From Lytechinus pictus (Eukaryota): DNA of 64,000 nucleotides. The stretch spans positions 13,144,001 to 13,208,000 of the forward strand of contig NC_087251.1 in the NCBI RefSeq assembly GCF_037042905.1. Reading direction: 5' to 3'. Below the pieces are notes generated by a model. The model was not told the DNA's origin. It worked only from the letters and a program-made list of their open reading frames with translations, and made no database searches. Below, piece by piece: positions 1 through 29,293 of the stretch; positions within the stretch are counted from its first letter, which is position 1; each line of letters begins with the position of its first letter. Both the position numbers and the translations under genes were made by a program.

Positions 1-583
1 ATAGTGGGTTATAGAGTGAATAATATGATTTATGTACTACTTATTCGGAAGGTGTCTCACTACATACCAATAACACCATGCAGTGTTGGAATAGAATGTA
101 CGATCATACTGTTTCAAATTTATAGTTATAAGTACATTTTTTTTTCTTTTTTTTTAAAATTCATTCTAAATTTGTGATAAATTAATAAAGGGTCTTAATT
201 GCCAAACCACTCATTTTACAATGACAACATCATTTTTAAGAAGCTATTCAACATGATTGCTGATATCTTTAACAGTAATTGTAGAGTTTGTGCTGAATCT
301 ATTATTATCTTTCCTCAGAATGATAAAATTCAGCCCCATTGCTTAGCTACAGTTTACTGTTATGGTAGCTTTACCAACAATTACAATTACTATGGAAACA
401 GGCTCAACATTTATTTAAAATTATGGTTTCTATGGAAGTTACCAATGATGGCAAAGTGTTCTTTGATATTTGGTGCAATGGATGTCGTGATAAAGGCCTA
501 TAGGGTGATGCTATGATCTTTATTTTAAATTATTATTAACACTTCTTCCTTTTCTATTCCCCTTCCTATCATGATCCATGCAG

Positions 584-748
584 TCAAACAATGTGGCAGG
601 AGGTGCAATAAAATACCATAAGAACGTGTACAACCCTGTCCCTCCGTGTCCACCAGCGAGAGATGTACCTGTAGAAGTAGCTGAAATTAGGTTACAAAAT
701 GGCGCCGGAAAACATGATGTTAACATCAACATGGAAGCCAGAGTATAG
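584..748 (+). CDS. Probable terminal coding exon of an upstream gene that starts outside the window (..SNNVAGGAIKYHKNVYNPVPPCPPARDVPVEVAEIRLQNGAGKHDVNINMEARV*)
   Basis: A pyrimidine tract (541-570) and CAG acceptor at 581-583 are followed by a 55-codon open frame ending TAG at 746-748. Composition is more GC-rich than the flanks, and a long AT-rich UTR-like region follows. No family recognised. Confidence 0.5.
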   Translation, partial: SNNVAGGAIKYHKNVYNPVPPCPPARDVPVEVAEIRLQNGAGKHDVNINMEARV

Positions 749-8851: not shown

Positions 8852-11800
8852 ATGTCAACTGGCGCTGGAAGCAGTTTTCGTGCGGCCAACAATGTCCTAC
8901 AGAAGAAATGGAATCAGAGGACATATCAGATGCATGTAGCAAAGGTAAGTTGACTAAAAAAGGGTAGAATATGATTTCAGGGAAAATAGATTTCCAATCT
9001 TATTTATACATCTGTTGCTTTGTTGGTACAATACATCATCGCCTTGTTAAGTAACGAATATGTAAATGTTCAGATACATGCATGTACTTCACCCTTCAAA
9101 TCAGCAAGAGATGGAAATGAAAAAAAATAATGCTACAACATAAAAATGTGGACTAATTTGGGTTTTACTTTAAAAACATTTACATGTAAGACTGACTTTG
9201 CTATTGCATCAATGGAGTCGAATTACATGAAAATATTTTTTAATGTTGATCTGCAAAATTCTGCTTATATACTGTAAGATATTTCTGTTTATCAATCCTT
9301 TTCCCCAGGATAATTTGCCTTCTGAGAGTGTAGCAGGTATAAGTGTAGATGTATTGTGAAATTGTTAAGGTGTGTCAAATTGAAAGGTGTTTTTCTTGTA
9401 CTTATCTTGCCATGTCAAAGTCGATAATGTAGATACAAAAATGTAAAATCTTTAAACAAATGTAGGCCTACCTCAATCTTTAGAGACTTTATCTATTTTT
9501 AGAGAAATATCAACCAAAATATAATTAGTGACTGATTCAAATTTTTTAAAACAACAGCCAAAATCTAAATTAAAAATGAATATTTGTTGATGGATATTAT
9601 GCACACGCTTGCCTTTGCCTGAAATATATTTCAGGCTGTACTAATATTTTGTACAGTTCTTGACTGGAATTCACTATTACTGTACTTGTACAGTATGCAT
9701 TCACCTATTTTGATGGGAAAGAGTATGTGACATCACCATGGTTCCCTTATCACTTTCCGTAACGACTTGGGAATTTCATATTCATAATTCCATTAATTCA
9801 CCAGAAGACTTTGTCAGAGCTGCGTATTGCTGATCCAGAGTTTAATCAATCATGATTTAATTTTAGGGTAACACACATTTTCCATAGATCCTAGCCCAAT
9901 CTCATAACGGGGCTCAGTTGGTCAGCTAATTTGGGTTTCATCAAGGATTACATTGGGCACTATAAGGAAGCAATTTGTAAAGTTACAGTGGAAAATTCAC
10001 TGTTCATGTGCACCTCTGACTTGTTTGTGGGTCAAATTTCAAAGCTTAAGAATTTTTTTTTATAAGCGTAAGGTCAGTAGCATTTACAGTACAGCCCAGG
10101 GATCCATGTCATACAGGGGGGAGGGGGTACACTTTCAAACATACAAGTACTTGTCCCCATATCCTTGAATAAGAGAATTTTACAAAATTGCAAAATGTAG
10201 TGATGGTGCTTAATATATTTCTCGTCCATTAGAGTATATCCCTCTTGTAGACTATTGTTGTTAGCGATGGACTTCCAATGATGATCATCAAATAAATGGA
10301 CATCAAATAATTTCACAATAAATTTTCACCTGCTGCAACCCAATACCAAATGGACATAAAATAATTTTAAATGAATGCAATGGAGTGGATGTATTGTGGG
10401 GAAAGCATCGTATATTGTTGCTGACAATGTTATTCATATAAAAATTTGCCTAGTTCATTTAATGCTTGGCATCACTTTTCATCTTTTATTATTTTTATTC
10501 CTTTACCCACACACCAAATTAACTTGGTGAAGAGAAGAATAAAACTGTTTCATGCTTCTTGTCCCCGAGTCTCCAAAGAGATCATTCATACAAATGTATA
10601 TATGTGGCCACAGTGGCCTTGTTTTTTTAAATCTGTTTCATATGAGCAGCTTCATTATACACTATATTATTGAGATCTGGTAGAACTGATATTTATAATG
10701 ATCAGTTTGGAGTTAATTAATTCTTTACCTTCTGGAACTGGGTGGTCCCTGTTCAAAGTCAATGGGAATCACAGAATTCAGAAGTCAACAGGCTCATCAT
10801 CAATCACTATCAGATACAATCAATCTGGAAATAAATAAGCAAAGACTTCATGGCAGTCCTCCACCAAATGTAGTCCGATTATGAATGCAGCTGTTTTCAA
10901 TTTCATTGACACTGAATCAGATAATATATTAAAAATCAATGCTAAAATCAATAGGACATTAGTGGGAGGTATACATATATCTGCCGAGTGAAACCCAGAA
11001 CTATGTTAACTCTTTATATTTGTATATTAGTAATATGTACATGTACAAGTAGGCTATCTGACTTCTTGTACCTTCCGTAAATTGGTAAATGCCCCCCAAA
11101 CAAAGATATATTCTGAAATAAGTTGCATCAAGAGTACGGAGGAATCTGAAGAAATAACACCAATAGTATCAAATTTTGAAATTAAAATTTAAGAAAGCCA
11201 TTTACTTTTGAGTTTTTGTCATGGAATGTTTCATTTTTTAGTACTTTATTGTAAAAGATCATTAGTTTTCACCTTTTTTTAAAGAGCTGTTGATGTCATA
11301 ATTAGCTTAATTTACAATTTACCTTTTAATATGAATTATTGAAAGATATATATTTTTTTTGGTTCAAAGGATATAAATCATGGTGAGACTTACATGTAAT
11401 GATTAAACTTGCTATTTCATATCCAAACTGTTGTATGTAACTTACTCTGATTAGAAAGAGAGATTATTTACATACATGAAGATCACAGCAAAAAAAGGGA
11501 AATCATTAGATGTTTAACATATTTCACATGATGCCTCTAGTGAGCACAAAATCAATAGTACCATATGGCATTACATGTATATGATTGATATACTGACAAC
11601 TTGGTCCTTGCAAAAAGCTTCTTGTGTGCACTTTGTCCTGTAGAAATGATTATACTTGACTTTGAAAAATGAGGTGGATGGAATAGTTTTGCTGCAGCTA
11701 TCGTTGCTTGGAAACATGGACAATGGAGTTGATTTTTAGTATCGGACAGTCATTTGTGTGAAATTTGTTTTTATATTGCATTACATGTATGATTACATGT

Positions 11801-14800
11801 ATGTTGAAAAAAAAACCCAGAAAAGTTAACACACCAATAAATTTTCATAAGATAGAAAATATTCAAAGGTTCATGAACAATACTCTCTTTGGGTTAAAAA
11901 AAGTACTCTGTGGTGGGGGGGGGGGGGGGGGGGTAGGGAAGGCCCCTTGGGATGCTGAGCGCTTTCATAATGGAATACATGTACATATTATATGTATGGT
12001 CATCTGTGAGCTACAGACTTGTGTAGATGACATATTGTACACTGCATTGTAACTTTGTAAGTTAATGTGGGTGTGAAAATATATGAATAGAGCTTCGATT
12101 TGATAAAACACCATCTTAATCTAATTTGAATTAATCAAATAGTCTTTAATCATTCTTAACAAAAGGCTGAGCATGTGCAATTTCCTTTGTAATTCCTGTA
12201 TTGTGGTATAATAATTTTTTGTTCATGCTGGTAATTAAGGATTTTTAATCACATCACTTGCAATTTACATACTGTATATTAAGTGAAAGTAGACAGCACA
12301 TTTAAAGAGTGAAATAAGATTAAACACAAGAAATAATCCTTATTTGATATTTTTCTCAGTGGTGCCACTGGATTTTGTTTATATGTGTGTGTGGGGTGCA
12401 GATAGGGTGGTAGGAATGTATAAAGGGGTACTCCACAGGCTGAAAATAATGTGTCTTGAACAGATAGAGAAAAATCAGCCGAACACAACTCTGAAAAAAT
12501 CAAAAAAATCGGACAAGAAATTTTAACGAAGTTATGACATTTTGAAGATTTGCATTATTATTGTGAAATGGTTCTATACATGTCTTCATGAATATTCAAT
12601 GAGCAAACTGATAATGTTATATCCCCACATGTATTTTATCATGTAAAATCATATTCATTTAAATTTTGACCTCGAAGAACTAAAAAAGAATCGCATTGAC
12701 AGCTGATTTAATGCATTATATACAGATATTCATCGCTGTACTTTTTTTATTTCAACAGAGACGTATCATGTAACACATACGTGTATGAAAATATGAAATA
12801 ATTGTGATTTCATGAATAATATAAGAAAAAGGAAAGTGTGGATGTGCATGAAACTGTTTTCACAAAATATTGCTAAAATTAAAAATTCAATAACTTTGTT
12901 ATTTGCTATAAGATCATTTTGAGGAAATTTTTATTCCTTTAACTGAATTTTACTCTATTAATTTAGATATACGTGTAATTATTTTTAGCCCCTGGTACTC
13001 CTATACATGTAGTCTTTGAATTCAAGAAAAATACAGGTATCATGAAAAGTTTAGTGTTGGCTTGGATTTTTTAAAGGATGAATGGAGATGTGGCAAGGGT
13101 AGGAGCCTATTGGTATTGCCAAAATTTGCAAAACACCCTCCAAAACCAGATGAATCTGTTGATTCAGATTAAATCAAAAGAATTGATATTGGGAGGAATT
13201 ATTTACTAATTACCTCTTTGAGACTTTAATATCTGATTCCATGATATCTCATGTACAATTGCATAGGAAGATAATCTATGAATTTGCTTTTAAAGCCAAT
13301 ATTAAAATATTAAAACCTAACCATAATTCTATATGCCTATAGTGGAGCGTTGTGGCCCAGTGGATTAGTCTTCGGACTTTGAAACAGAGGGTCGTGGGTT
13401 CGAATCCCAGCCATGGCGCAATTTCCTTCAGCAAGAAACTGATCCACAGTGTGCTGCACTCAACCCAGGTGAGGTAAATGGGTACCGGTAGGAAGTAATT
13501 CCTTAAGAAGCTGTGTGCGCTGTGAACGCCTAGCTTAGCCTGGTAAAATAGGAGCGCCTTGAGCACCTAACAAGGTGGATATGTGCGCAATATAAATACC
13601 CTATATTATATCTGACAGGGAATTAACAGTCATAGCAGGATAAATTATCAGGTCTGACCATAGACATAGTATTTGCAAATATTTTATGGGAAATAATACA
13701 CTTTTTAATCTTTTGTACATTCAAAAGAACCATTTGGTCTGAATTGAAAAAGTGTTTTCCTGTAACCTGAACCAATATATACAGGTACTGTATACATCCC
13801 TTACACTCAAACCACTTTCTGTTTCTGAGCATTGCATATGAGGCTCTCAGGTTGCCTAGCAACAGTGACTTGTTGATTTCACTTCGACACTTATGAATAA
13901 TTCTATCAAAATAATGACAAGAAGAAACCATCAAAGTCTGAAACGTGGTTACACATTTTTATTGAAGAATTTTATTGTTATGGGAAATAGGTCAAGAATA
14001 TGGTGAGTCGTTTGTAATTACATGATTAATATTCTCTTAAGGTACATTTGTGGTATACATGTAGGCCTACTGTATGTTCTGAAGGAAAAGTATTTACTTT
14101 AGTGATTCAACCTTTAAAAGGAATAAATAGATACTGTTTAGTTGACCAATTAGCATTACATGTATACGGTACAGTGTATTCATTATTAGAATAAGAAATG
14201 ACATAAAATGAACAGGAACTTTGTCTGTCATTTACACTGTAATGTCTATTTCTTCTTTGTTTATTTTTGTTATAAGAGTTTTGTTATAAGAATGGTACAG
14301 TTTTAGGATATGAAGTGAAATTAAAAAACAATGTGTGATCTGTTTGTATTAGTTCTGATAATAATTTTGTTTTACATGGGAGGGGGAATCAGTTGGATAT
14401 ACAGTACAACATATCAAAGGTTGTAAAACATATTTTAATCACCAAAGTTTCAATTGTTTATGAATATGTTTATGCATGCTATTTACTTGAGTTCACTTTT
14501 CTTCCACTACATGTACATGTAATTGATGAGTCTAGATATTTTGTGCCTTTGAATTATTTTCTCAGAGTTTAATGACATTATTGATGTATCTTTTCTTTTC
14601 TTTTCCCCCAGAAAAATGGCATGAGGACCAAGATCGATGCCACCTCTCCCAAGGTCTTCCCCCATCTACAGGTTAACATGAAGAAGTTGCAGGTATTGGT
14701 TTCTTTCTTTTATAATAGTTGAGATCAGAAAAAATGACATTGAGAAAGGCTGAATCTTCAATATTGCAATGTAAGATTGTAAATTTATTATTTTGGTTGA

Positions 14801-17800
14801 GTTCACTATGGATACATGTAGCTTTGGAGCTGCTGAAACAGATAATTTTCAAGGTTCAAGACCCCTCACTTTGCTTTCATAGTGATTTCCTTGAAACAAT
14901 CATATGCTATGAATGTTAATTAAACCTCAGTTTTAAAGAAACAAAGCATTTCAACCTGGCTATCTCGGTGACACCCGTGTAATTCATGTATTTGCTCAGT
15001 GAAAAGCTACATGTATTGGTCCGTTCTGAGATTTCAGTACTGGTTTGTTATAAATTTGAATGGATTACTTATGAGCTCTCTATAGAAAAAATTGATTGTG
15101 CATTTATTATCCAATATTTATCCTTTTTCCTTCATAGCAGGTACATTATAGTTCTCCAGGTAATAATTATTTTAATAGGGATTTGTTGCAATGAATCGAA
15201 TGGTAAAGTATGTAGAAAGTTTCTCCTTCTCTTTCTCTTTCCTATAAAAGGTGAACCTTTATTTTGATTATTTTTTATATATTTATTTTCAGGCTGAAGA
15301 AGAGAAGCAAGCCCAGATTGATCATGAGAATCGCATCTTATTAGCAAAGCTGACAAACATCATCAGATCTGGTGGCCAAATTGATAACTGGAATTTTGAA
15401 TATGAAGCCCAACCCAAAACGTGAGTTTTTCATATTAAAGATTGATAATGATAATTGAAGTTGATAAAAATCAACAGGATGAAGTTATTATCATTTGAAG
15501 CAGCATATTCTATATTTTTGTATTAATAAATATGCCCCTTTATACATTTTGTACATTTTTTGTGACTTAAGACTAGTGCTTGATTTATACATGTATATTT
15601 TTAAGCAAAATATTCATGTTCTGTAAAATTAAATTTTAGGACAAAATGACTATGAAAGAATTGATATATGATGAGAGAAAGAAATGATTATCAATATCAT
15701 ATGAAGAATATAGATATGATTTGCTACAATTTTAGAACAGTTACATAAAGTTATGTATATTAGCATTTATTATTTATTTTAGTATTTTTTGTTTGTTTAC
15801 AGGTTACATGCTCCATATAAGAACAGAGAACAGGAGAGAATAGATCGAGAAAATGCTTTATTACTTAAACGTCTCAATAATGTCAAACCTCAAGTTAATT
15901 TTGACAAGATGGTGAGTTTTAATATTAGGTTTCAAGATTTCAGAATATATTTCATTTCCAACAAATACTATAAATAACACGCTTTGAATTAAACCACAAT
16001 CAATAATACTTTTGTTAACTAGTCAGTTGTAAAATGAGCAATAGTAATGCAATTGTTTGTCTGTTTGTGCTGTTCTATTGTGGACAGTATATTTTTTTAA
16101 ATTCAATTGAAGTTATAATGAAATTCTAATGTTCATAAATGGGAAACAATTTTTCTGTGCACATGTGTGAAATTAACAGTGTTTATTAAACCATGAGATT
16201 ATGCAGTCATAGTTTTGATGATATGGTAGGTAGTGCTTCCAACCTTTATATTTTGAGCAATGAGACGTCACAGTTGAGATTTAAGTCACAACTCAATAAA
16301 TTTCCAGTTTTCCTTTTTTACCTAGAGGTATTAATGTAGCAAATAAGCCCATGAACCAGCATCATTTTGGGGGGTCATTTTTGGCTTATATTGGTACCAA
16401 AGTCACTATTTGCAGAGTTTGGTGAAAATGGCATGGATTTCATTTTAACTCTGGAATATCCTTAACTGGCTGTCAATTGCAAATAAATTAATATCCCAAC
16501 ACCTGTCATAAGTCTTGCAATTATTTGCAACTTTGCTATTGATGACTTGTTCCCTTCTTGCAACAAGAAAAAAAAATTATTAAGGAAATTAAATTGATCT
16601 ATGAATTGGGAAATTTGTAATTGATATTTACAATTGATTGTTAATAGTTTCCTTGCCACACCCCTGTAAACTAGTACCATGAGAAAAAAAAATCATACCA
16701 ACGAAATGATTTGCTTGTTGCTTATCAAGTTTGAAGTTTGATTAGTGAAAGTGTCAATTTTAGAAATGTACAATTCTCCAGTCTGATCTTCAAGTTGGAT
16801 GTACATGTAGTGGCATCCGCCTGTAATTTGAGCTATATATGGGGAAGTCAAATTGATGCAGGTGTTCAAGGTTTAAGCCCTGATCGCATCTCACAAATGG
16901 TGACATTACAAGTCTTTCCAATGTGAATCGGATTAATATACATTTGTTAAATCTCCATGTTCTTCTCATCCACCCCTATCACTGTCAGGAGGACGACTAC
17001 CTCATGCATAACTACTTCCTAGCTCAGAAGGCCCAGGCCACAAAGAACTATGAGGTGGACCTCAGAGGCGTTGATGAACCTGATAAATTTGTCTTCTATG
17101 CTAAGGACAGGCATGCCAACAAAGAGGTGAGCTTAATTATCATTTAATTATCAAGGCATGAAGGAATATAATAAAACAATTTTTTGCAAAGCCAGTAGAG
17201 GGTCAGCTTGCAACAGTGGTCCCCCTGGGTGACAAAGAGTATTCTTCTTTTCTTATCTAATCCATGTTGCAATGTACCATAAAATGGAGTAGTACATGTA
17301 AATATTATTCTGTGATTATTTACATTTTGGTCTTAGCTTTTTACCTGTAATATGATGATTTACTGTTGTTGACAAAACAAAATAAAGATTCATACGTTCA
17401 TCTATCCATCCATCCATTCATTCATTATTAGTGCAGGTGTGATATCTGTAAATCAATATTTAAAAGCTCACTATTTAATAGTTGGAACGTGATATTGATT
17501 ATTTATTTTGTATGTTTCAGAAAACTTTTGTTGATGGTGAAATTGAAGAGACGATAGAGGAGCCAGTGGAAGGAGAAGTCAGAGAATTAACATCAGCCAA
17601 AGTGGTAAGTCACAAGATTTGAATGACAGTTCAATCAATACCAAGGTTAAATCAATATGTGCTGCATTCTTAGAAACAATAGACAATGCAGAAAAATTTT
17701 CAGCTTATCTTCAGAAATACTCTACAATGAATCATATTTACAGCAGTTTAATGGGTCACTCTATCCAAACTTTCTTATATAGCTTTCTGTTTAATTATTG

Positions 17801-18167
17801 TAAATGTGATACAAGAATTGATTTGTAATTGTCGTCTTTGTTTCTTTCTTTGAATTTATGTTGTTAATATCAGAACCTGTGATAATCCATAGAATAATAA
17901 GGTAAATGATGGAAAAAAATAATTGCTAAATGTATGGATATAGAGATAATTGAATGAACGATATGAATGATGGATGAATGAATTAATTCACTACACATTA
18001 ATGCTCCCCTCCTCCCTCTACACTTAGTTTGTTTAATTTATTATGATACTTTGACCCTTGACTTTGAAATTTCAATTGCCTCTGCTGGCTCCCCCATATT
18101 CTCTGTAATGTTTGATAAATATCGTTGAATGTAGACTACAATTTTTTTTACTGAGAATATAAAATAA

Positions 18168-18198
<31 letters not shown>

Positions 18199-21100
18199 AA
18201 ATAGATATCATATGAATAATAATAAATGAATGAAATACATATTTTTCATTTAGGGTGTTTCAAAGAGATTAGCAACAAGACAGCAACTCAAGAGAAGATC
18301 CACAAAACTTCCTTTGATTGGACCAGAGAGGAAAAAAGCTGAGGAGAAGAAAAAGGTGAGATATTGCTTTTAAGATGTTAATATAATATTTTCAATTCCA
18401 CAAAAACTTGTCATCATTGAATTAACAATGAATTGACAATAATTAATTTGCAGAGCTTTTTTAACAATAGGTGTATAAGAACAACTTCTGTACAACAATT
18501 TATAATATATTGATGTCATTACATTTTGTTTGCAAGTCTGAACAAAATTATTATTATAAATACACTGAAGAAACTTAATGGAGCAGAGAGTAAATTACCA
18601 TTGGTTTCAATAGATAAAGAAAATTAAGAATAGCATGTTGATATTGAAAGTGAATTGCCTTTTGTTGCCCTTATCCATATATTTATTCCTCCTGTGAGTG
18701 GTACTTACACTCAGAATTTAATCCATTTACATGGCATTGCTGCAGTTTTAAAACCTATAAATGCCACTTGGTTATATTGTCTGTTCGTTCTGAGAGCTCC
18801 AAGGGAAATATGGTGTATATTTATTGGGAAGGTCGTTTGTCTTTTATCGGCCACATACAATTTAATATGTGTACTTTACATTTTATTACCAGTGTTTCTT
18901 GATCCTTTTATTTTTGTAGAAAGACTCGGTGGTGAAGATTGCAACATATAACCAAAAGGAGGAAGCTGCCAAACTCTTCAAAGCAACCAAGGGAATGGGT
19001 AAGAATATCAACCAAGTAACAGATATTCTGACGAAATATGGACTTGGATGATAAGAATAATAATCATATTATCATTAATGAATAGATTGTTAGCTTACTG
19101 TGTAGTAACTAGTATTTAAGTAATAAACTTTGGTAACTCCAGACTTAATAACAAGAAATCAAGCACTGAGTGTCTTTCTTGGAAGTGTGATTTTGAAGGA
19201 ATGTATTGATTATTTGTTCTTTTCACTTTTGTAATTGTTTGAAAAAGAACATATTAAATCTCTGTAAATTTATTTTGATATCTTAGAGTTAAGAAGAAAT
19301 TTTAAAAGTTTCAACGAAGCCTTATGTTTCCGCAGGGGTGATGGGAGTGTGCTTCAGTCTATTTCTGCAATTATGATTGATAGATAAGACAATATTCTTT
19401 TGTCTGTATTCTGCAGGTAATCCGGAACAGATCTTGGTTCAGACATTAGCCAAACGTCAGTATCAACAGCGACAAGACACCATGAAGAAGTTTGAAGAAA
19501 ATTACGGTCTGGTAAGTGGAGTTTGTACGTGTTCACACAGCTCTATTTCCCTCTCTTTATTCTTATCCCCATGATAGTAGTATGAATGATGATGGTGAAA
19601 GTGATGATGTTGGTAATGATGGTGGATGTGATATATATGGTGATTGTCATGGTGATGGTAATATAGTGGTAATGAAAGTGATGATAATGGTAATAATGCT
19701 GGTTGTGGTTAGGGGTGGTTCTATAATTTACCAGAAGGTGGTACTCATTGAAAAACAAAGATAAAATAACAACAATGAAATATAAAGATTATCCTTTTTT
19801 ATAGGGAACACTTTCCCTTAACAAAATTGACAAGCAAAATATGGAAAGAAAAAAAGTCATAAAAAGTGGGCTTGTGCCCCCTCCCATGGATGGTTTCTGA
19901 AGAATATATGTTTTGAGATTTGAGGTTATTCTGGAATTTGTTATTCTATATTCCTGCATATGCAAGTGGAAAGTGTTGTGAAATTGAGAAGTATGTATAC
20001 GGTACTTATCAATCGCTTCCGAATTTAAAATGCTTGAGGCTGTTCACCATCATTGAAATAAGTGATGTTTTTTATGTTTGCAGACCTTGGAGGAAGAGTT
20101 GAAGAATAACCTGAATGCAGAGTATGATGATATCGTTGAAGCCCTCCTAATGACCAGAGAAGAATTGGATGCCATGACGATACGAAGAGCTCTCAAGGTA
20201 CATTGAATAAAAAATGATTTGTCACATTGAAAGATGATTTTCTAGAAAGCAGAATACATTCACATCTTTAACGACTTATTGTATAAAAGGACTACATGTC
20301 CATAAAGACCAGTTTGTTTCCCTCGATTAGTATTAAAACATGTCTTATAGGAGCCTCTTCATAGCAACCATTCTCTTAAAATTCATTATATTAATGTCTT
20401 GATCCCTTGAGCAGTCTTTACATGCAAGTTTTACTGAGAAAAATTGTGTTTATCTTTATATATGAAATTTTCATATGAAAACAATTTAGTTTACATGATA
20501 TTATGCAATTTCTAATAAAATATTAGAAAGTGTGTCCTGTGATAGGAACTCTCAAGATTTAGGTCAAAACATTTGTTCAATGAAATCAAATTTGAAATTA
20601 CCTCCTGTTTCTATTTTGTTCAACAGGGTGATGATTCATTGGTCGAACCTATTATTGAGGTACTCTGCACAAGAAGTAATTCTGTAAGTAGATTATGATG
20701 GTGGGGATGACAATGATGATAATGACAATGATGATTATGATAATGATGCTGGTAATGATGGTATTGACAATGATGATGATGAAAATTATTATTATGATGA
20801 TGATGGTGGTGGTGAGTTAGCATTAGTGATAGTAATGATGCTGCTGCTGCTGATGATATTACCAATTGTCATCATGATGATTATGATAGCCATGTTGTCT
20901 GTGAGGATGAAAATAATAATGGTTGCAATGGTGGTAGCGATCTAGACTATTTTAGTGAAGGTTGTTTTAGGAACCAGTCATTTCAGTAGATATTAATCCC
21001 ACCGCTGCCACCAAATCATGATTATGTAATGACAATTCGAAATTTCATTCTTAATAGTCACTCTTTATCAACACATTTTAAGATTTCAACACTGTGCCAA

Positions 21101-24100
21101 CAAGAGTCATTGTATAATGATTATGATAGCTGGATTTATTTAGCACTCTTGGCGTGAGGATACAAAGTGCTGCTATTATTACCACAGCTTTAGCGTGAGC
21201 TACCATCACCGGTGCTCAGTGCATTCAAGGAAATAATCCTGCCAGGTACCATTTCACCTCACCTAGGTGACACTGATAGGTGGCGCTACAACACCTACAT
21301 TTCTTAAAATGTTTATTTTTTTTACATGTAGTTGAAGTGGCAGTTTTCCATGTTCAATATTTTGACAATGTTTGAGAATTAATGGTAATTATGATAATTT
21401 AAATGATATTGGTATGGTGGTTTTCTATTTATGCAGGCTATTGGTTTAATTAGAGAAGCGTACAAGAAGTTGTATGGTGTCACCTTAGAAGATGACATTA
21501 CAGCAGAAATAAAAGGCAAACTCAAGAACTTATTTTTGGTTCTTTCAAAGGTAAGTAAAACCCAAAATTGAATTGTACCCAAGAAATAATTGAACAAAAA
21601 TCAAAAGAGATACTGACAGGACTATTGTAATACCAGTTCATCATGATCTATGCAAATGATCTATAAGAATCATAATTAAATAAATGAGAAATTTATATAC
21701 TCAGTAGTCATGATAATTAACTTGACATGATAAATATGACTTTGTGAAGCATACATCAAAGTAAATGGAAAATATCATTGGTTGGTAGACATTTTTTCTA
21801 TGTACATATGAATATGAAAATATTTATGAATTTACATAGTTAATCAGTTCTTAAGAAAATTAGATTATGATTTTATTTTCATGAAACTCCAGCTGTAAAT
21901 ATTGCCCTGATTTATATATTAGAACATGTTTTTCCTATTTTTCTTCTTGGTGTAATTTTATTACATGTTTATGCAATTGAATGCCTTAATAGTATTCATT
22001 TTAACCATCCTCCCATAGGGTGTTAGAGTAGAGAATGTTGATGTGGACGAGGAGGCTGCTGTACGAGACGCTGAGGCGCTCCGGGATGCGGGAGATGAAA
22101 GATGGACACCCAGGAGTGAGAAGATGTCTGAACTTCTCCAATCATCCAGTCTACTTCATTTTAGGGAGGTTCTCTTGCAGTATAATAAAGTAAGTGAATA
22201 GTCCTTGCACTGATTTAATAATGATTCTTCTTCATGGAGTTTACAGAGCTTGGTTGATATTCCGAAAATCAGATTGTCTTTTACCTGAATATATATTGTT
22301 GAAATTATTTTTATATTGACAGATTTGAAAGCTTACTTTTGATTTATTGAAGTGATTAAAATTGCTCCCACAGACCAGCATGCAAGTCAAAGTTAAACAA
22401 TGTTAAGTTAATAGTTTACCTCATTTCTGATCACTATGATGATTAAGATAACAGAAAGTCATTTTCAGAATACCAGCCCTGGTATTCAATGAATTTATTG
22501 GTACATCGATGTGTGTTTCTTCAGAACCTCCAATAAAATGAAAGTTAATAGAATTAATCAGTTTGTTAGATATGTAGTTCATTATAATAATAATAATAAT
22601 ATAGAGTATTTCTAAAGCGCCAAATCCACATTGATTATGTGCTCAAGGCGCTGAAATATACTTGGTATATCATTATTACCCCGGCTGTAGCTGAGCGGCC
22701 ATATAGGCGCTAAAGCATTCAAGGAATAAATTATGGGATGGCTGTATTTACCTTTTTTACTCAGATATTTTTTTTAATGAATTAGCAAGTAATTAAAGTA
22801 TAATTTCCTGTAAAATGGCAAAATGTGTCATTTACATATTAGCATAGTTATTAACCAGTCATATTTCTCCCAGCATGGTCAGTATTTTCTGTAAAATTTG
22901 CTTGAAGAAGAAATAGGTACATCATGCAAAGACATTGGAAACTCATTTTCTGTTTATATGGCAGTTGTTTCGTTTTGTCATAGCAAGTATTTATTGCTCT
23001 TTCTCTCTCAGTCCACTTCATTGTATTTAGTGTATCCTGCTCACTCATTCAGATTTTTCCCAGATACTCACCTCTTCCACTTACCTTTTCAATGTCAGAC
23101 TTAAAAAAAATCCTTTAATGTTTGATTCTATAGAACCTCTTTTTAGACTAAGAAATATTCTTACATATTTCAAACTCAAATGACCACTAAATTTGTGTAT
23201 CTGTGAGGTATTGTCATAATCATGAATGATTGTGTGTGTTTGTTTATCTGATAATTAAGTTAATTGATTGATTTTTTTTTTCAAATGACTGTGCTTGACT
23301 AATAAGTGATAGGCAACACACTGTTTCCTCCTCAGAGTTATAATAGCATGGTCTTCTAAATAGATGTTTTAGCATATCTATATTGATTATCAAACAAATA
23401 TGATTTCCCAAAAGAGTATAAAGTAAATCATTTCTACTTTTAATGGGCACATTAACCCTTACCAACTTGTGATTAATCCGCTCAGTTTTGAGGGAAACTG
23501 GTTGTTTCTTATATGAAGAAAATGTATTTGATCTAACATATACCCATTATTTTTGTTTTAAATCTACAGCTAACCAACTCAAATCTGGTAAAAGAATTAG
23601 AAAAGTCACTCTTTGGAGATTTTAAAGATGCAATGCTCTGTCTAGGTAAGTTTCTGAGAACCTATTCACAAATGATTTGGGTTTAGCTAGCTTTATAAAA
23701 AATCATTCCCACATTTTTAGCTAATCATTTATCCTCTGCAAATCATGTTTCATTAGTTCTCGTTAGCAGTATTAACATATTCATGTAGAATTGATTAGGC
23801 TTATTTAGAAAGTATTGAAAAGTTGAAAGATACATGTGTGGTAGTGAAAAGATTAAGGATAGATCACTTTCCATATGCTAAAATGCTTGGCTCATCCTTG
23901 ACTTAAGGAGAATTATACACCAGGCCCATCTTGTACAAAGATATATTGGATACCGTACATTTATTCAGGTATGAGCATTGTTTAGATAAATTTGCCAAAG
24001 AAGATGACACATGCTATGTTTATGTAATGTGTCAATATTTCAAATAAGATATATATATCATATGACCTTTTTTGTCACAGTGAAATGTATGAATAGCAAT

Positions 24101-26330
24101 ACTCAATTCCTTGCTGAACGTATTCATGCATCACTGACTGGAGAAGCAGATGACATGACACTCATTAGAATCATCATCACCCGATCAGAGGTAGGCTTGC
24201 ATCATATATGATTTGCTATATTGTCATTTAATGACTATAGTATTACATGTAACAGCAATCGAAATTACCCTGAATTGCAATTGATCATGAACTACAAGAG
24301 TGCGAATATTTCCATTGACCAAACTGAAAATGAGACAAAAAAGCACCAGCCTGTAGAAAAGAGAAGAGCATGCCTACTTCCCTTTGTCTCTTTCTCTCAC
24401 TCTCATGTTATCTTTTTATATGACTTCCATGTTGACTCATCTTGGGGTCAAAATGTTGCCCTGTGATTATATAATTGTACACCATAATTCAGAATATAAT
24501 ACCCCAGATGGAATATTTTCCCCATGTGTTGATTAATTCCCTTGTGCTATTTTATAGCTTGATTTTCAGTACATCAGGTGGACACGGATTTAAAGAATGC
24601 TTTATAAACAGACCCCGATGGATGCAATTTATGGTGTTAATGGCAGCCCATAGTTAGAGAAAATGATACTGATTTTTATAAATTTCTTTTCATTGTGCAG
24701 CTTGACCTTCCATACATCAGGCGGAGTTACAAGAAGCTATATCAGCAGACCCTGATGGAAGCAATTGAACAGAAGTGCAAAGCCTCCTTCAAGATGGCCC
24801 TGGTCCAGATGGTCCAGGTCCATGGAGCATTCCAAAAACAAGACCAAGTAAGCTCTATTCTCTCTACCAGTATAAGAAGTGATTTTCGACATATATATGC
24901 CCAAACTCCATGGTATATTTTAACACCTAAAAGTGTGGGTCTCTCATAACACTGACTGGTGTTCTTATAAACACTTTTGACCTGATGCAGTATGTGGCCT
25001 CATTTATTTCAAGAAAAAACAATATTTACTAGACTTCATTAATTTAAATGTCCTTTTTTTTTAATTAAAGATAACAAGTGTTGTAACCCCAGCAATGCTA
25101 CATTACTTTATTCTTATTCTGTTTAATGCAGAAATGTGATTATAGAACTTGATCCAAAGCTATTTGAAATTTAAATCATTTTAGACTAAAGAAGAGGAGC
25201 CAGGAGGATCTGACTCACAAGAAGCTGAAAAGCAGGCTGGTGGACCTCCTAAACCTTCCCAGCAGAGGCCCTTGAAGCACCCTACACCTAACACCGGTGC
25301 CAAGGTACCTGCCAGTAACCCCCTGGTGAAGAGTACCCTAAAGAGCAATGACGCCAGAAAGGGTACTCCAGGATCTCCAAACAGATCAGCAGGAGCAAAG
25401 TCTAAACAGGTAATTAATTAGTCTATTAAAAAGGTATTTTTTCTAAACCTGTAGTGAATAAAACTTTTTACTTTCCTGCAAATAGACAGGTGGATGTGAA
25501 AAAATACTAATTAATCTTCTTTCATGAAAATATCAAATTGTAATTCTATTATTCATACTCCTTAAATACCATTCCATAATAATTATTGTGAAGGTTACTA
25601 CATGATTGGTATATGAAAGCTTTTTATTTCATTTAAATTGATGATTTTCTGTATCAGATTATTACAAAAATTAACCTTGTGAGCTTAATATTGAAGCTGT
25701 CTAGTTCCATCTCTTTTAAATCATAATCATGATAAACATAAAATATTCCCTCTTTTTCTTTAGACTACCAACTCTCCTGGAAATTCTGGAAAGTCCAGAC
25801 AAGCTCCTGGAACCAAGACTGGAGTAGGGGCGTCGGCCATCAGCAGGAAAACCACCACACCCCCACGAAAGGCGACTCCACCCAAACCAGCCCAACCCTC
25901 AAAAGAAACCTCAAAAGCACAACCACCGACCAAGAAGAAGGTGGAGGAGAAATCAACTACTGAAAAGGAAGATCAAGCCAAGATGGATGAAGAGAAGGAA
26001 GAGAAGAAGATGGAGGAAAAGAAAATGGAGAAGGATAAGGAGGCCCAAGGAGAGGCATCTGCAGAGAAAGAGACTCCTGAGAATGAAGAGGGTGAGAAGG
26101 ATGAAGATGAAAGTGATAACAAAGATGGGATGGAGAAAGAGGAAAAAACGGAGGAGAAGTCCGAAGCAGAGATGAAGTCTCTGAGTGGTACAGAACCAAC
26201 ATCGGAGGACATGTCAGCAGAGAGTGAAGTGAAAGAAGAGGTGAAGGAGGAAGAAGGTAAAGTGGAAGAATATGGAAAGGAGATTGAGATGAAACCCAAC
26301 GAGGATCAAGAGCAAGGAACTTTATCATGA
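8852..26330 (+). CDS. CFAP97/Hemingway(KIAA1430)-domain + annexin fusion protein, ~829 aa, 18 coding exons
   Basis: Exons: 8852-8944, 14612-14692, 15293-15420, 15803-15911, 16989-17126, 17521-17604, 18254-18355, 18920-18998, 19417-19511, 20084-20197, 20627-20683, 21437-21550, 22019-22189, 23570-23645, 24081-24190, 24701-24847, 25185-25409, 25764-26330. All are GT-AG with compatible phases, giving a 2490-nt ORF. The N-terminus (NNVLQKKWNQRTYQMHVAK..IDATSPKVFPHLQVNMKKLQAEEEKQAQIDHENRILLAKLTNIIRSGGQIDNWN..EQERIDRENALLLKRL) matches CFAP97D-type proteins. Exons 8-16 encode four annexin repeats (EAAKLFKATKGMG; IIEVLCTRSN; DAEALRDAG; FLAERIH..DDMTLIRIIITRSELDL). Confidence 0.85.
12421..13004. mobile_element. 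Degenerate non-autonomous DNA transposon (TAAAGG-type termini), related to the 62244-62849 element
   Basis: Starts TAAAGGGGTACTCC and ends in an imperfect inverted copy (GGTACTCCTA). Internal blocks (AAGTTATGACATTTT, AAACTGATAATG) are shared with 62244-62849. Confidence 0.55.
13344..13610 (+). mobile_element. tRNA-derived SINE
   Basis: A-box TGGCCCAGTGG, B-box GGTTCGAATCC (13397-13407), body ...CCCAGGTGAGGTAAATGGGTACCGG..., 3' GCGCCTTGAGCACC...TATTAT tail. Second copy at 31224-31496. Confidence 0.85.
20695..20885. repeat. (GAT/GGT)n low-complexity microsatellite in intron
   Basis: Imperfect trinucleotide run; similar runs at ~19570-19720 and ~45415-45605. Confidence 0.85.
21140..21270 (-). 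mobile_element. SINE 3' fragment, minus strand
   Basis: Reverse complement of the SINE body (GGTACCATTTCACCTCACCTAGG; TTCAAGGAAATAATCCTGCC). Another fragment at ~22590-22730. Confidence 0.65.
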
Positions 26331-28068
26331 TGAGCTGCATAAAGAATTGGAAATTATTTATTAAAAAAAACTATGGAAAGCCATCACAGCCATAATTCAC
26401 CATCTAGAATATATGTGTTGCTGAGTGACGTAACTTTCAGAGAGGTGTATTGCTCCTGAAATGACAAACTATGTAACTCAAAATTGAAATATTCAAGAAA
26501 GTTACAAAGCATTGATGCCATAACACCAGAAATAACGAGTTGTTTCTTTGGGGTGATGTTGTAGCTTCATTTTGTAAGATAGAGAGAGAGACCTTAGACA
26601 GTATATATCTTTTGGTGTTCAGTTGGTCATCTGTTTCTTCACAATAAATAAGTGATTTTGAGATAAGAGGTCTATTAACCCAAGCAATACTATGCCTTAT
26701 CAATTCAACCAATCAGCATGCTTTGGGTTTTTTTTTTTTTTTTTACAAAGTGCCATTACATCTGCCTTTGATTGACAAAATATTACCTATCTAGCCTTTC
26801 TTAGTTCGGATTGATATTTGAATATCATAATACAGTATAAAAACCTCAAACAATTGCTGATTCTTGGACAAGAATCTGTGTTCAGGTTAACAATATCCTT
26901 GTATGTTTAACCTAAATGATAGATATGATTATCCATATCCTCCTGTTTTGAGTAATTGTGTTGTAAAGATGTATACAATGCACAGATATTAATCCGTCAG
27001 ATATATATCTTACAAGTGATTCTAGTTATTATGTTGTGATTTTACTTATTCACTCAAAGAAAATATGTTTATATCTTTCTCTTACTCTTACTCTCTCTCT
27101 TTCCCTCCTTCATTCATTATGGGTAGTGCAAATAGATACCTTTCTGAATTTTGTTAGATGCATATATTTTTTAATTTTTCACATATTCATCTTGACCATC
27201 TCCATAGAGTTATGATGTTTATATATATTGCTTTCTGTTCTATGAATGCATATTTGTTGTTATTTTGTGCATTATGACAAATTAATTTTCTAAAGACAAT
27301 ATATCCATTATTGGATTTAGTAAAAAAATAACAGATCTTGAAAATAATAACAGAGGGATTCCAAAATTAATTTTCTTGTAGAGGCATGTCTCAATTTAAA
27401 AATAAAAATGCCTCGCCTGGATCCAAGCAGCAGCTTGTCATTGTTCAAAACTCACCTACACCCGACATCTGGATTTATTTTTAATACATGAAATTTAGAG
27501 TGTAGACTTTCAACCTGTCTTCATCATTGGATATCAATAAAAGAGATTTAAAGCCTTTAGGCCTATATATTCAGAATCTTTTTTTTTTATGTCACAAATA
27601 GATACATTTTAAAGATAGTATTTGATTTGGGATCTTGAATAATACAACTTGTAATCCGTATGTAATTCTTGATAAAGTTAAGCTTTATCTAGAAATTCTG
27701 TATGATTGTCATACAAGTCGTCAATATGATTCAAGTGTCCTTAACTCATGAAATACAAAGTATTTTTATGATCTGCCAGAAATGTGATTTTTATTTGTAA
27801 AAACTGTTGATATGGAGTATACACTGTCATGTATCACTATGTTAAACTGTGATGCAAATTTATATTTTGTACATGAAAATTTACACATGCACCAATTTGA
27901 AATTGATGATATATTTTTATTGCCTTATACACTCATCATGATCATGGCCATTTTTCAAATTATTTCAAATCAAATCTAATTTGATAATGTATGTTATGCT
28001 TTGATCACAATTTTGTAATGTTGTATCATACTACATGAACTTTGAATTTTAACTTATTGTACTTTGTA

Positions 28069-28665: not shown

Positions 28666-29293
28666 CAGGGCCCTGGGAATGATTTTTTTACTAGGGGTGT
28701 CGATGTAAATTTGAAAAAAAAGTTATATAACAAAACGAAGGTCATTTTGTCGCACAGAAATTTGACAAGGAAAAAAATAAAAACAAAAAGGGTTTTCACT
28801 ACAAATTAAATGAAAAACATAAATTATTCCTTCTTTTTCTTTAGACTACCAATTCTCCTGGAAAGATCATCTAGGTCCAGAGAATTTGAAAAGCAATTAA
28901 AAAAAAGAAAAAATAAAGGCTTCTCGACAACATGAAGGTCATTTTGTCCAAGAGAAATTTGACAAGCAAAAAAAAAAAAAAAAGGGGGCCGGGGGCTCAC
29001 TACTAATTATTTTTCCACACCTACCAGAATTCCTGGGGAGTGTTTCATCAACATTTTCATCCGACAAGTTGTCAGATCTGACATCTTTCTCTGATGTTGA
29101 TTGGCTGAGAGGTACTGTTACTATGGTAACTGTCGGATAAAATGGGACTTGTCGGATAAAACGTCCGACAAGTACTTTCATGAAACGCCCTCCCGGGGGT
29201 GCTTCCTACATGTATGGAGAATAAAACACCCAGCACCCCTTACGAAAATCTTGGGGGTGCTTCACCCCCGCACCCCCGCTTCCCAGGGCCATG
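28666..29293. mobile_element. Non-autonomous hAT-like element with 8-bp TSD, containing a nested MITE and a captured gene fragment
   Basis: TIRs CAGGGCCCTGGGAA / TTCCCAGGGCCATG. Identical 8-bp flanks AATTATGG at 28658-28665 and 29294-29301. Internal repeats GAAGGTCATTTTGTC..AGAAATTTGACAAG. Confidence 0.85.
29032..29197. mobile_element. Nested MITE (GTGTTTCAT...ATGAAAC termini)
   Basis: Inverted ends GGGGAGTGTTTCAT / ATGAAACGCCCTCCC and internal CCGACAAGT/ACTTGTCGG repeats. Termini resemble the 6519 MITE. Confidence 0.75.

What the first reader, a model, noticed from the sequence alone, without database searches (positions are those of the whole stretch)
8852..26330. CFAP97/Hemingway-annexin fusion gene: candidate axoneme-to-membrane tether
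Seen: one uninterrupted 18-exon ORF in which exons 1-5 encode a CFAP97D-type (KIAA1430/Hemingway) domain, exons 6-7 an acidic then basic linker, and exons 8-16 four annexin repeats. There is no stop codon or separate annexin start between them, and all joining introns are phase-compatible. Established: Hemingway/CFAP97-domain proteins act in motile cilia and sperm flagella; annexin cores bind membranes; Giardia alpha-giardins are annexins associated with flagella. I know of no described protein combining these two domains. Inference: the protein could anchor on doublet microtubules through the CFAP97 domain and contact the ciliary/flagellar membrane through the annexin core.
Basis: partly seen in the sequence, partly recalled or inferred. 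Interest (0 to 1): 0.92.

Follow-up and report, generated by a model that had tools for sequence, protein, structure and literature searches.

The report
Conserved CFAP97D–annexin fusion gene of cilia
This sea-urchin gene really does join a protein segment known to sit on the outside of ciliary microtubule doublets to an annexin, in one transcript; the same join is found from corals to acorn worms, nobody has studied it, and the urchin annexin has lost its usual calcium sites.

Summary
Window 8852-26330 (+) carries one 18-exon GT-AG gene. Its 829-aa product is identical to Lytechinus pictus RefSeq XP_054758870.2, misnamed 'neurofilament medium polypeptide-like'. Pfam finds Hmw_CFAP97 (aa 28-125, 70 bits) and four annexin repeats (154 bits).

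RNA contigs of the same species cross exons 3-10 in one piece. A sister species gives 18-40 junction reads per intron, with no step at the CFAP97/annexin boundary. It is one transcript.

The architecture is not private. It occurs in all five echinoderm classes, hemichordates, annelids, a brachiopod and two cnidarians. The CFAP97-adjacent annexin tetrads of bilaterians form one clade (100/100). So it is ancient and conserved, already in databases under wrong names, and uncharacterised in the literature searched.

The N-terminal part is homologous (E 1e-18 to 1e-12) to CFAP97-type chains built into sperm doublet-microtubule structures. There, CFAP97D1 belongs to a module outside the A-tubule seam.

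The sea-urchin sperm doublet model holds a stand-alone paralogue, not this protein.

Best reading: a doublet-surface anchor carrying an annexin-fold module. Membrane tethering is possible; Ca2+-bridged binding is unlikely.

The parts
8852..8944 (+). Exon 1 (aa 1-31): start codon and N-terminal part of the CFAP97D-type region
   Evidence: ATG follows an in-frame stop; GT donor. Part of the model identical to XP_054758870.2. Junction to exon 2 not seen in reads.
14612..14692 (+). Exon 2 (aa 32-58): first part of the Pfam Hmw_CFAP97 domain (the 'KIDATSPKVFPHLQVNMKKLQ' stretch)
   Evidence: Found because the loose 5' end of an RNA contig at 15290 matches 14660-14689 exactly. AG/GT sites, phase 0.
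15293..15420 (+). Exon 3 (aa 59-101): CFAP97 core motif IDHENRILLAKL
   Evidence: RNA contigs X1/X2 and 18 junction reads for 15420>15803. Pfam.
15803..15911 (+). Exon 4 (aa 101-137): second CFAP97 motif RIDRENALLLKRL
   Evidence: Junctions 15420>15803 and 15911>16989 in contigs, plus 23 reads.
16989..17126 (+). Exon 5 (aa 138-183): C-terminal extension of the CFAP97D region, aligned with PDB CFAP97 chains up to aa 167
   Evidence: E138, D139, Y141, H144, Y146 and K156 are invariant across Ambulacraria.
17521..17604 (+). Exon 6 (aa 184-211): acidic linker, net charge -6
   Evidence: Junctions 17126>17521 (29 reads) and 17604>18254 (28 reads), plus contigs. Charge. pLDDT about 30.
18254..18355 (+). 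Exon 7 (aa 212-245): basic linker, net +10, with the conserved motif KLPLIGxERKK
   Evidence: Junction 18355>18920 (23 reads) plus contigs. P231, G234, R237, K239 and K245 are invariant. P and KK are kept as far as cnidarians. pLDDT 82 for aa 231-240.
18920..18998 (+). Exon 8 (aa 246-272): start of annexin repeat 1, AB loop KGMGN
19417..19511 (+). Exon 9 (aa 272-303): annexin repeat 1
   Evidence: Junctions 18998>19417 (40 reads) and 19511>20084 (21 reads).
20084..20197 (+). Exon 10 (aa 304-341): end of repeat 1 (cap position is N, not E/D) and start of repeat 2
20627..20683 (+). Exon 11 (aa 342-360): repeat 2 AB loop, KGDDSLVE
   Evidence: Junction 20197>20627 (30 reads). The loose end at 20684 equals the start of exon 12.
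21437..21550 (+). Exon 12 (aa 361-398): second half of repeat 2
   Evidence: Pfam annexin on the exon alone, E 6.9e-9.
22019..22189 (+). Exon 13 (aa 399-455): inter-repeat linker and first half of repeat 3 (loop RWTPRSE, with invariant R426 and W427)
   Evidence: This exon alone retrieved the S. purpuratus and Nematostella fusion proteins..
23570..23645 (+). Exon 14 (aa 456-481): second half of repeat 3
24081..24190 (+). Exon 15 (aa 481-517): first half of repeat 4, loop LTGEADD
24701..24847 (+). Exon 16 (aa 518-566): second half of repeat 4 and the conserved 'VHG' extension. An in-frame weaker donor lies at 24817.
   Evidence: Pfam annexin on the exon, E 8.9e-6. Using the donor at 24847 (GTAAGC) makes the protein identical to the RefSeq model.
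25185..25409 (+). Exon 17 (aa 567-641): basic P/S/T/K-rich tail with the conserved motif KPLxRPxPN..A.VPA.NPLxKS
   Evidence: P595, L596, P599, N611 and P612 are invariant in 13 ambulacrarian orthologues. The motif is also seen in annelids. Exon-sized share of words in RNA-like runs.
25764..26330 (+). Exon 18 (aa 642-829 plus stop): low-complexity tail. Together with exon 17 it is basic up to about aa 700 (aa 567-700 net +18), then Glu/Lys-rich and acidic (aa 701-829 net -30). This is the source of the 'neurofilament' and 'DNA ligase 1' misnomers.
   Evidence: No Pfam hit. pLDDT about 30.

Best explanation
SHOWN. One Lytechinus pictus gene is transcribed and spliced as a single mRNA. Its 829-aa protein has four parts:
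(i) a CFAP97D-type helical region (aa ~11-167);
(ii) a ~60-aa disordered acidic-then-basic linker ending in a conserved KLPLIGxERKK motif;
(iii) one annexin tetrad (aa ~253-558) in which all four type II Ca2+ sites are degenerate;
(iv) a tail with one conserved short motif followed by low-complexity sequence.
The same fusion is conserved in echinoderms, hemichordates, annelids, a brachiopod and cnidarians, so it predates the bilaterians.

INFERRED. The N-terminal region lies along the outer surface of axonemal doublet microtubules, as its solved homologues do. Mammalian CFAP97D1 belongs to a module outside the A-tubule seam, on the peripheral side of the doublet, and holds globular partners (TSSK6, EFCAB3) there. 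In this protein the globular partner is attached covalently. The annexin-fold module is therefore displayed on a flexible leash in the space between doublet and ciliary membrane, probably in epithelial or larval cilia rather than sperm.

In urchins the module most likely acts as a Ca2+-independent structural or adaptor module. It could contact the membrane through the invariant Arg-Trp loop of repeat 3 or the basic tail, but not by the classical Ca2+ bridge. In cnidarians and spiralians, further tetrads with canonical sites could provide genuine Ca2+-dependent membrane binding. That would make a doublet-to-membrane link the likely ancestral role.
For: - Gene model and identity to XP_054758870.2.
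- Domains.
- One transcript. Single contigs with 0 mismatches span exons 3-10. Junction reads per intron run 18, 23, 29, 28, 23, 40, 21, 30, with no step at the domain boundary. The stranded run X21 puts the RNA on the + strand.
- Conservation of the fusion, with both Pfam domains in every listed orthologue.
- Bilaterian CFAP97-adjacent tetrads form one clade at 100/100, and all fusion-protein tetrads form one clade at 100/99 against four outgroup tetrads.
- Homology to doublet-bound chains: (8snb_4T E 1.3e-18; 9v10_Aa CFAP97D1 9.6e-13; 8otz_Z 9.5e-12).
- Position of the CFAP97D1 module outside the seam, at the doublet/outer-dense-fibre junction, and its loss together with TSSK6: PMC13066092. 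CFAP97D1 listed among external sperm MAPs: PMC11779644.
- Degenerate Ca2+ sites. Zero GxGT-38-D/E sites in every echinoderm orthologue, against 3 of 4 in insect annexin controls, 2-3 in spiralian second tetrads and 1 per tetrad in cnidarians.
- Conserved linker and tail motifs, and the invariant R426-W427.
- Fold confidence: annexin core pLDDT about 90, CFAP97 helices 70-85, linkers about 30.
Against: - No localisation, proteomic or binding data for this protein.
- The solved sea-urchin sperm doublet (8snb) carries a 231-aa stand-alone paralogue, whose L. pictus orthologue lies on contig C2. It holds no chain matching the annexin part. So this protein is not a resolved sperm-doublet component.
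- The fused CFAP97D region is the most diverged of the three urchin CFAP97D-type genes (e.g. TLHAPYKNRE where the paralogues have SLNR..R), and it may bind elsewhere.
- The mapping of SPU_019139 and of the Nematostella models to this gene family could not be made.
- Tissue of the RNA runs is hidden by coding.
- The tree has only four outgroup tetrads.
Confidence: 0.55

Rival explanations
1. The CFAP97 domain anchors on the doublet, and the annexin core binds the ciliary or flagellar membrane in the classical annexin way through Ca2+-bridged acidic phospholipid. The protein is then a Ca2+-responsive axoneme-to-membrane tether in sperm flagella and motile cilia.
For: - Fusion and transcript are real.
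- The homologue's site is on the peripheral face of the doublet (PMC13066092).
- A roughly 60-aa disordered linker could span the gap (the distance is my inference).
- The Trp of the repeat-3 loop is invariant.
- Cnidarian and spiralian family members keep canonical sites in some tetrads.
Against: - 0 of 4 canonical type II sites in all echinoderm orthologues. The loops read KGMGN, KGDDS, RWTPRS and TGEADD, with caps N, E, S and K.
- This protein is not present in the sea-urchin sperm doublet model.
- No expression or lipid-binding data.
Confidence: 0.2
2. The protein is microtubule- or centriole-associated but not axonemal. It might act at basal bodies, the transition zone or the ring centriole, or on cytoplasmic microtubules, as proposed for Drosophila Hemingway and for CFAP97 itself. 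The annexin module would then serve vesicle or membrane docking during ciliogenesis rather than act along the shaft.
For: - The PF13879 family also includes non-shaft proteins (my knowledge of Hemingway/CFAP97; not tested here).
- The fused domain is diverged from the paralogue resolved on the doublet.
- The long low-complexity tail is typical of scaffold proteins.
Against: - Homology extends over the whole region that aligns with doublet-bound chains, aa 11-167.
- The stand-alone CFAP97D-type relatives with solved structures are all in very large assemblies, judging by chain ids such as 4T, 4R and 3r. That these are axonemes is my inference.
Confidence: 0.15
3. Annotation or assembly artefact: two neighbouring genes (a CFAP97D1-like gene and an annexin gene) wrongly read as one, as older S. 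purpuratus annotations had it.
For: Older S. purpuratus models split the locus into a 183-aa 'C17orf105 homolog', a 383-aa annexin and a 385-aa 'DNA ligase 1'. The rRNA-depleted run X21 shows some reads in the intron after exon 5 (17210-17410, depth about 1.9).
Against: - Single RNA contigs and 23-29 junction reads bridge every exon from 3 to 11, with equal counts on both sides of the boundary.
- The 183-aa model ends in two residues read from the intron.
- The fusion is predicted independently in more than 20 species of at least five phyla.
- No cluster of read starts appears before exon 8 (table 6).
Confidence: 0.02

Closest known systems
CFAP97D1 (C17orf105) of mammalian sperm, and the stand-alone 231-aa 'CFAP97' chain of the sea-urchin sperm doublet (PDB 9v10_Aa, 8otz_Z, 8snb_4T)
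   Same: PF13879 domain over the full profile. The alignment runs over about 125-155 residues, including both (I/V)xxEN..LL.(K/R)(L/I/M) motifs and the DNWN turn. These are small helical proteins bound to the outside of doublet microtubules. CFAP97D1 holds globular partners at the A-tubule seam (PMC13066092).
   Different: Those proteins are 160-230 aa and end after the domain. Here the domain is followed by a linker, an annexin tetrad and a 260-aa tail. The genome also has two stand-alone CFAP97D-type genes (contigs C2 and C16) and CFAP97 proper (C20). One-to-one orthology with D1 or D2 was not resolved.
Annexins with one or several tetrads (best solved matches: annexin A6, A3, Hydra annexin XII, A4, A5)
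   Same: Four PF00191 repeats, about 30% identity over roughly 300 residues, E 1e-44 to 1e-85. Confident annexin-core fold prediction. Cnidarian and spiralian family members are multi-tetrad, like A6.
   Different: The N-terminal 'head' is a whole CFAP97D domain rather than a short regulatory peptide. All four type II Ca2+ sites are degenerate in echinoderms. There is a long C-terminal tail after repeat 4, whereas ordinary annexins end there.
Annexins with degenerate Ca2+ sites (vertebrate ANXA9, ANXA10) - recalled from memory, not tested
   Same: Annexin fold retained while the GxGT/acidic-cap sites are lost. This implies Ca2+-independent roles.
   Different: Those are stand-alone cytosolic annexins with no microtubule-binding domain. 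No sequence comparison was made here.
   Same: Annexin-fold proteins associated with flagella or microtubule cytoskeleton, some with atypical Ca2+ sites.
   Different: They carry no CFAP97 domain. The association is non-covalent and lineage-specific. No homology beyond the annexin fold is implied.
Drosophila Hemingway (founder of PF13879)
   Same: Same Pfam family. Required for motile cilia and sperm flagella (my knowledge; the family name is given).
   Different: No annexin part, a much larger unrelated remainder, and no fusion found in insects: the insect hits are plain annexins B9/B11.

Membership tests
Hemingway/CFAP97 family (PF13879) | Match to the Pfam profile above the curated cut-off, over most of its length | tested here: met
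   P0007: 70.2 bits against a cut-off of 25.6, aa 28-125, profile 1-99 of 100. The 17-exon draft lacking exon 2 gave 51.3 bits.
Hemingway/CFAP97 family (PF13879) | Sequence homology to members whose binding to doublet microtubules is seen in solved structures | tested here: met
   8snb_4T E 1.3e-18 (aa 11-167); 9v10_Aa 9.6e-13; 8otz_Z 9.5e-12; 9e2g_4R 1.7e-9; 9e78_3r 3.8e-7.
Hemingway/CFAP97 family (PF13879) | Localisation to the axoneme or cilium and a motility or assembly phenotype | not testable with these tools
   Only an indirect expression lead (PMC4300403).
CFAP97D1 orthologue (C17orf105) | Closest relationship to vertebrate CFAP97D1 rather than to D2 or other paralogues | tested here: inconclusive
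   An old S. purpuratus model of exons 1-5 was named 'C17orf105 homolog'. However, the best solved match is the urchin stand-alone paralogue (70.7 bits), ahead of mouse CFAP97D1 (51.6 bits).
Annexin superfamily (PF00191) | Four consecutive annexin repeats forming one core | tested here: met
   4 stretches, 154.5 bits. Full-length alignment to annexin A6, A3, XII and A5. Core pLDDT about 90.
Annexin superfamily (PF00191) | Type II Ca2+ site: GxGT in the AB loop plus an acidic residue 38 positions on | tested here: not met
   0 of 4 in L. pictus and in all echinoderm orthologues. Controls: insect annexins 3 of 4, the Priapulus multi-annexin 5 sites. Residue-level view. This feature defines classical function, not fold membership.
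Annexin superfamily (PF00191) | Ca2+-dependent binding to acidic phospholipid membranes | not testable with these tools
   Needs a liposome assay. The sequence argues against the classical mode in urchins.
CFAP97D-annexin fusion family (proposed here) | PF13879 at the N-terminus followed by a linker with the LP.(I/L)(G/D)...KK motif and at least one annexin tetrad on one polypeptide | tested here: met
   Present in P0002, P0007-9, P0011-20, P0023, P0024, P0032-34, P0019 and P0005. Bilaterian first tetrads are monophyletic at 100/100.

The most novel reading that the evidence does not exclude
The fusion is a 'Rosetta stone' for the filamentous microtubule-to-membrane bridges seen along motile cilia. 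The ancestral metazoan protein would have used a CFAP97D anchor at the outward-facing A-tubule seam and canonical annexin tetrads to clamp the ciliary membrane to each doublet in a Ca2+-sensitive, periodic way. Ambulacrarians kept a Ca2+-independent version. Lineages without the fusion, vertebrates included, would achieve the same link by non-covalent CFAP97D-partner complexes, which predicts an undiscovered CFAP97D-annexin or CFAP97D-membrane-adaptor interaction.
Probability: 0.15. Interest if true: 0.85.

Novelty: new variant of a known kind. Interest (0 to 1): 0.6.

Why it matters
Both halves are well-known families, but their conserved covalent union has not been described in the literature searched. 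It is hidden in databases under misleading automatic names: 'neurofilament medium polypeptide-like', 'DNA ligase 1', 'myosin-9-like', 'annexin A7/A13/A6-like'.

The N-terminal half is homologous to proteins now seen by cryo-EM on the outside of ciliary doublets, on the side that faces the periphery. The fusion therefore gives a concrete, testable candidate for what occupies the doublet-to-membrane space in invertebrate cilia. It also offers an evolutionary series running from Ca2+-competent multi-tetrad forms in cnidarians and spiralians to a Ca2+-site-less single tetrad in echinoderms.

L. pictus is a genetically tractable urchin, so knock-outs, tagging and cryo-ET of embryonic cilia are practical. 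If the protein turns out not to be ciliary, the finding reduces to a correctly re-annotated, oddly built annexin.

Tried and rejected
A search for a missing exon between 15912 and 17022 gave nothing credible. The real acceptor is at 16989 (confirmed by reads).
- The 17-exon draft lacked exon 2. It was found through the RNA contig's loose end.
- The donor at 24817 is in frame but weak (GTCCAT). I rejected it for 24847, which reproduces the RefSeq protein.
- The artefact reading (two genes) was rejected; see the rivals.
- The protein-atlas search gave no usable hit.
- The Cell 2023 paper that describes 8snb and 8otz is not held. That 8snb is the sea-urchin sperm doublet therefore rests on my memory, plus the near-identity of its chain 4T to peptides encoded at L. 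pictus contig C2.
- I could not map SPU_019139/Sp-Anxa7, or the Nematostella models 96324, 96179, 34056 and 240545, to this gene family. There is no supplement text and no other paper. That expression evidence stays a lead.
- Word-indexed protein searches scored only 8000 candidates each. Failure to find the fusion in molluscs, arthropods, cephalochordates or vertebrates is therefore not evidence of absence.
- No complex prediction was run. The claim is binding to a microtubule lattice, which the tool cannot represent.
- No second read laying was possible, so exons 1-2 and 12-18 lack direct junction evidence.

Full report
**1. What is in the sequence**

The region is AT-rich animal DNA (GC about 0.33) with short exons. 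Reading the three + frames and the splice sites, I built a chain of GT-AG exons from the ATG at 8852 to the stop ending at 26330.

Two errors in my first drafts were corrected by data:
- The acceptor of exon 5 is at 16989, not 17023.
- An 81-nt exon at 14612-14692 was missing. It came to light because the unaligned 5' end of an RNA contig laid at 15290 is an exact copy of 14660-14689.

With the stronger donor at 24847, the 18-exon model gives 829 aa. This is identical to database protein P0007 = XP_054758870.2, 'neurofilament medium polypeptide-like [Lytechinus pictus]'. The window is therefore L. pictus (G000 contig C7, 812 Mb assembly).

**2. Domains**

- Pfam on P0007 gives Hmw_CFAP97 at aa 28-125 (70.2 bits, cut-off 25.6, whole profile) and annexin in four stretches (154.5 bits). 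Single exons also hit annexin.
- A tetrad HMM places the core at aa 253-558.
- Exon 6 is acidic (net -6) and exon 7 basic (net +10).
- The tail is first basic and P/S/T-rich (net +18, aa 567-700), then Glu/Lys-rich (net -30). The tail explains the automatic names.
- AlphaFold2 on an alignment of 13 orthologues gives pLDDT about 90 for the annexin core, 70-85 for the CFAP97 helices (H12-36, H48-83, H104-127, H134-158) and about 30 for linker and tail. The exception is aa 231-240, at 82.

**3. One transcript or two?**

I laid four runs on 15200-21200.

- In two RNA-like contig sets of the same species (X1, X2; no mismatches), a single contig runs exon 3 > 4 > 5 > 6 > 7 > 8 > 9 > 10, with the joints exactly at my splice sites. 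It continues on both sides. The 5' loose end is exon 2, and the loose end after 20683 is the start of exon 12.
- In raw reads of the sister species (X24), the eight introns have 18, 23, 29, 28, 23, 40, 21 and 30 junction reads. There is no jump between the CFAP97 exons and the annexin exons, and no pile of read starts before exon 8.
- The stranded L. pictus run X21 has its first mates on the - strand, which fits an RNA from the + strand.
- The same run has a few reads in the intron after exon 5. I read this as pre-mRNA, or possibly a minor short form.
- For the tail, the only evidence is a word share of 0.59 of 24650-26650 in RNA-like runs, against 0.63 expected if exons 16-18 plus 3' UTR are present without introns. 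Identity to the RefSeq model and conservation add to this.

Older S. purpuratus annotations cut the locus in three: a 183-aa 'C17orf105 homolog', a 383-aa annexin and a 385-aa 'DNA ligase 1'. The 183-aa piece simply reads two codons into intron 5.

**4. Relatives**

Exon 13 alone, searched against 1.84 billion representatives, found only six proteins. Among them were an 817-aa S. purpuratus protein and a 1969-aa Nematostella protein, and both carry PF13879 plus annexin repeats. Three word-indexed searches then found the same two-domain architecture in:
- echinoids: Lytechinus variegatus, S. purpuratus and two Diadema species;
- a brittle star (Amphiura), a sea cucumber (Apostichopus), a sea star (Asterias) and two crinoids (Antedon, Anneissia);
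- three hemichordates (Ptychodera, Saccoglossus, Glandiceps);
- two siboglinid annelids (Ridgeia, Lamellibrachia) and the brachiopod Lingula;
- the coral Acropora, plus two unnamed assemblies.

Ambulacrarians have one tetrad plus a tail. Spiralians have two tetrads, and cnidarians two to five.

In a maximum-likelihood tree of 29 tetrads, the CFAP97-adjacent tetrads of Ambulacraria and Spiralia form one clade (100/100). All tetrads from fusion proteins form a clade (100/99) against two insect annexins and a Priapulus multi-annexin. The outgroup sampling is thin. The fusion is therefore old: at least bilaterian, and probably cnidarian-bilaterian.

None of the library's papers mentions the combination.

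**5. The CFAP97 half**

Against the PDB, aa 11-167 match a 231-aa 'cilia- and flagella-associated protein 97' chain of 8snb (E 1.3e-18), CFAP97D1 of 9v10 and 8otz (about 1e-12), and two further entries.

The 8snb chain is a different gene. Peptides almost identical to it are encoded at L. pictus contig C2. A third CFAP97D-type gene sits on C16, and CFAP97 proper on C20. The C16 gene shares the intron positions of exons 1-3 of the fusion gene.

From the literature: CFAP97D1 is one of the sperm-specific external microtubule-associated proteins (PMC11779644). It belongs to a TSSK6-CFAP97D1-EFCAB3 module that lies outside the A-tubule seam, at the junction of doublet and outer dense fibre, and it is lost as a unit in Tssk6 knock-outs (PMC13066092). 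The outer dense fibres lie peripheral to the doublets. In a cilium without them, that face looks at the membrane; this last step is my inference.

**6. The annexin half**

The core aligns end to end with annexins A6, A3, XII, A4 and A5, but the Ca2+ sites are gone:

| Repeat | AB loop | Cap residue |
|---|---|---|
| 1 | KGMGN | N |
| 2 | KGDDS | E |
| 3 | RWTPRS | S |
| 4 | TGEADD | K |

A pattern scan for GxGT-38-D/E gives:
- 0 sites in every echinoderm orthologue;
- at most 1 in hemichordates (GIGT in repeat 2);
- 0 in the first tetrad of spiralians, but 2-3 in their second tetrad;
- about 1 per tetrad in cnidarians;
- 3 of 4 in insect annexins used as controls.

What is conserved instead:
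- Arg-Trp in the repeat-3 loop. The Trp aligns with the W of the 'kWGTDE' loop of annexin A6; that the equivalent Trp in annexin A5 inserts into membranes is from my memory.
- The linker motif KLPLIGxERKK.
- 'VHG' after repeat 4.
- The tail motif KPLxRPxPN..A.VPA.NPLxKS.

**7. Reading**

What is shown is the gene, the transcript, the two domains, the loss of the Ca2+ sites and the deep conservation.

What I infer is a doublet-surface anchor that carries an annexin-fold module on a leash. I expect it in epithelial or larval cilia rather than sperm, because the solved sperm doublet holds the stand-alone paralogue and no annexin chain.

The expression lead fits this. [quoted passage not shown] I could not tie those identifiers to this gene.

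A Ca2+-bridged membrane contact is unlikely in urchins. It is more plausible for the canonical distal tetrads of cnidarian and spiralian members.

**8. Verdict**

A real, correctly read and ancient fusion. It is present in databases but misnamed and unstudied: a new variant of known kinds, of moderate-to-high interest, and directly testable in a tractable urchin.

Noticed in passing
window 28809-28864: A 55-bp copy (51/55 identical) of the end of intron 17 plus the first 22 bases of exon 18 (25728-25783) lies 2.5 kb downstream of the gene. Whether it is ever used as an acceptor is unknown.
   Followed up: partly
window 17127-17410: The rRNA-depleted L. pictus run X21 has reads in the intron after exon 5 (depth about 1.9, against 3.9 on the exon), and three reads carry a TTTC insertion at 17248. 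Read-through would give a 189-aa CFAP97D-only product, like the obsolete S. purpuratus model XP_003728165.1. It could be pre-mRNA or a minor short isoform.
   Followed up: no
window 16406-16606 and 21029-21200: Two intronic stretches have very high RNA depth with many mismatches and loose ends in all four runs. This is typical of dispersed repeats transcribed elsewhere, not of exons of this gene.
   Followed up: no
window 44880-45245 (+): An open exon encodes part of an exocyst Sec10/EXOC5 helical bundle (PF07393, E 1.8e-12, profile 356-437). The next gene downstream is therefore probably EXOC5. I take the adjacency to a cilium-related gene as coincidental.
   Followed up: partly
G000 C2:16213774-16216941 (L001); C16:24377592-24381320 (L003/L004); C20:10865732-10869019 (L002): Three further PF13879 loci. 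C2 encodes the orthologue of the chain built into the sea-urchin sperm doublet (8snb_4T). C16 is a second stand-alone CFAP97D-type gene with an acidic tail and the same intron positions as exons 1-3 of the fusion gene. C20 has a 415-aa open exon typical of CFAP97 proper.
   Followed up: partly
P0010 (994 aa, MetaClust); window 1-748: An old predicted protein joins EGF-type domains to the C-terminal half of this annexin (aa 382-825 of the model, 62% identical). It probably merged the upstream EGF-repeat gene noted in s1-294519 with this gene in another urchin, which hints at conserved gene order.
   Followed up: no
window 20690-20945: Intron 11 holds a trinucleotide (ATG/ATC-type) microsatellite. 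It gives long Asp/His/Met-rich open frames on both strands and is not coding.
   Followed up: no
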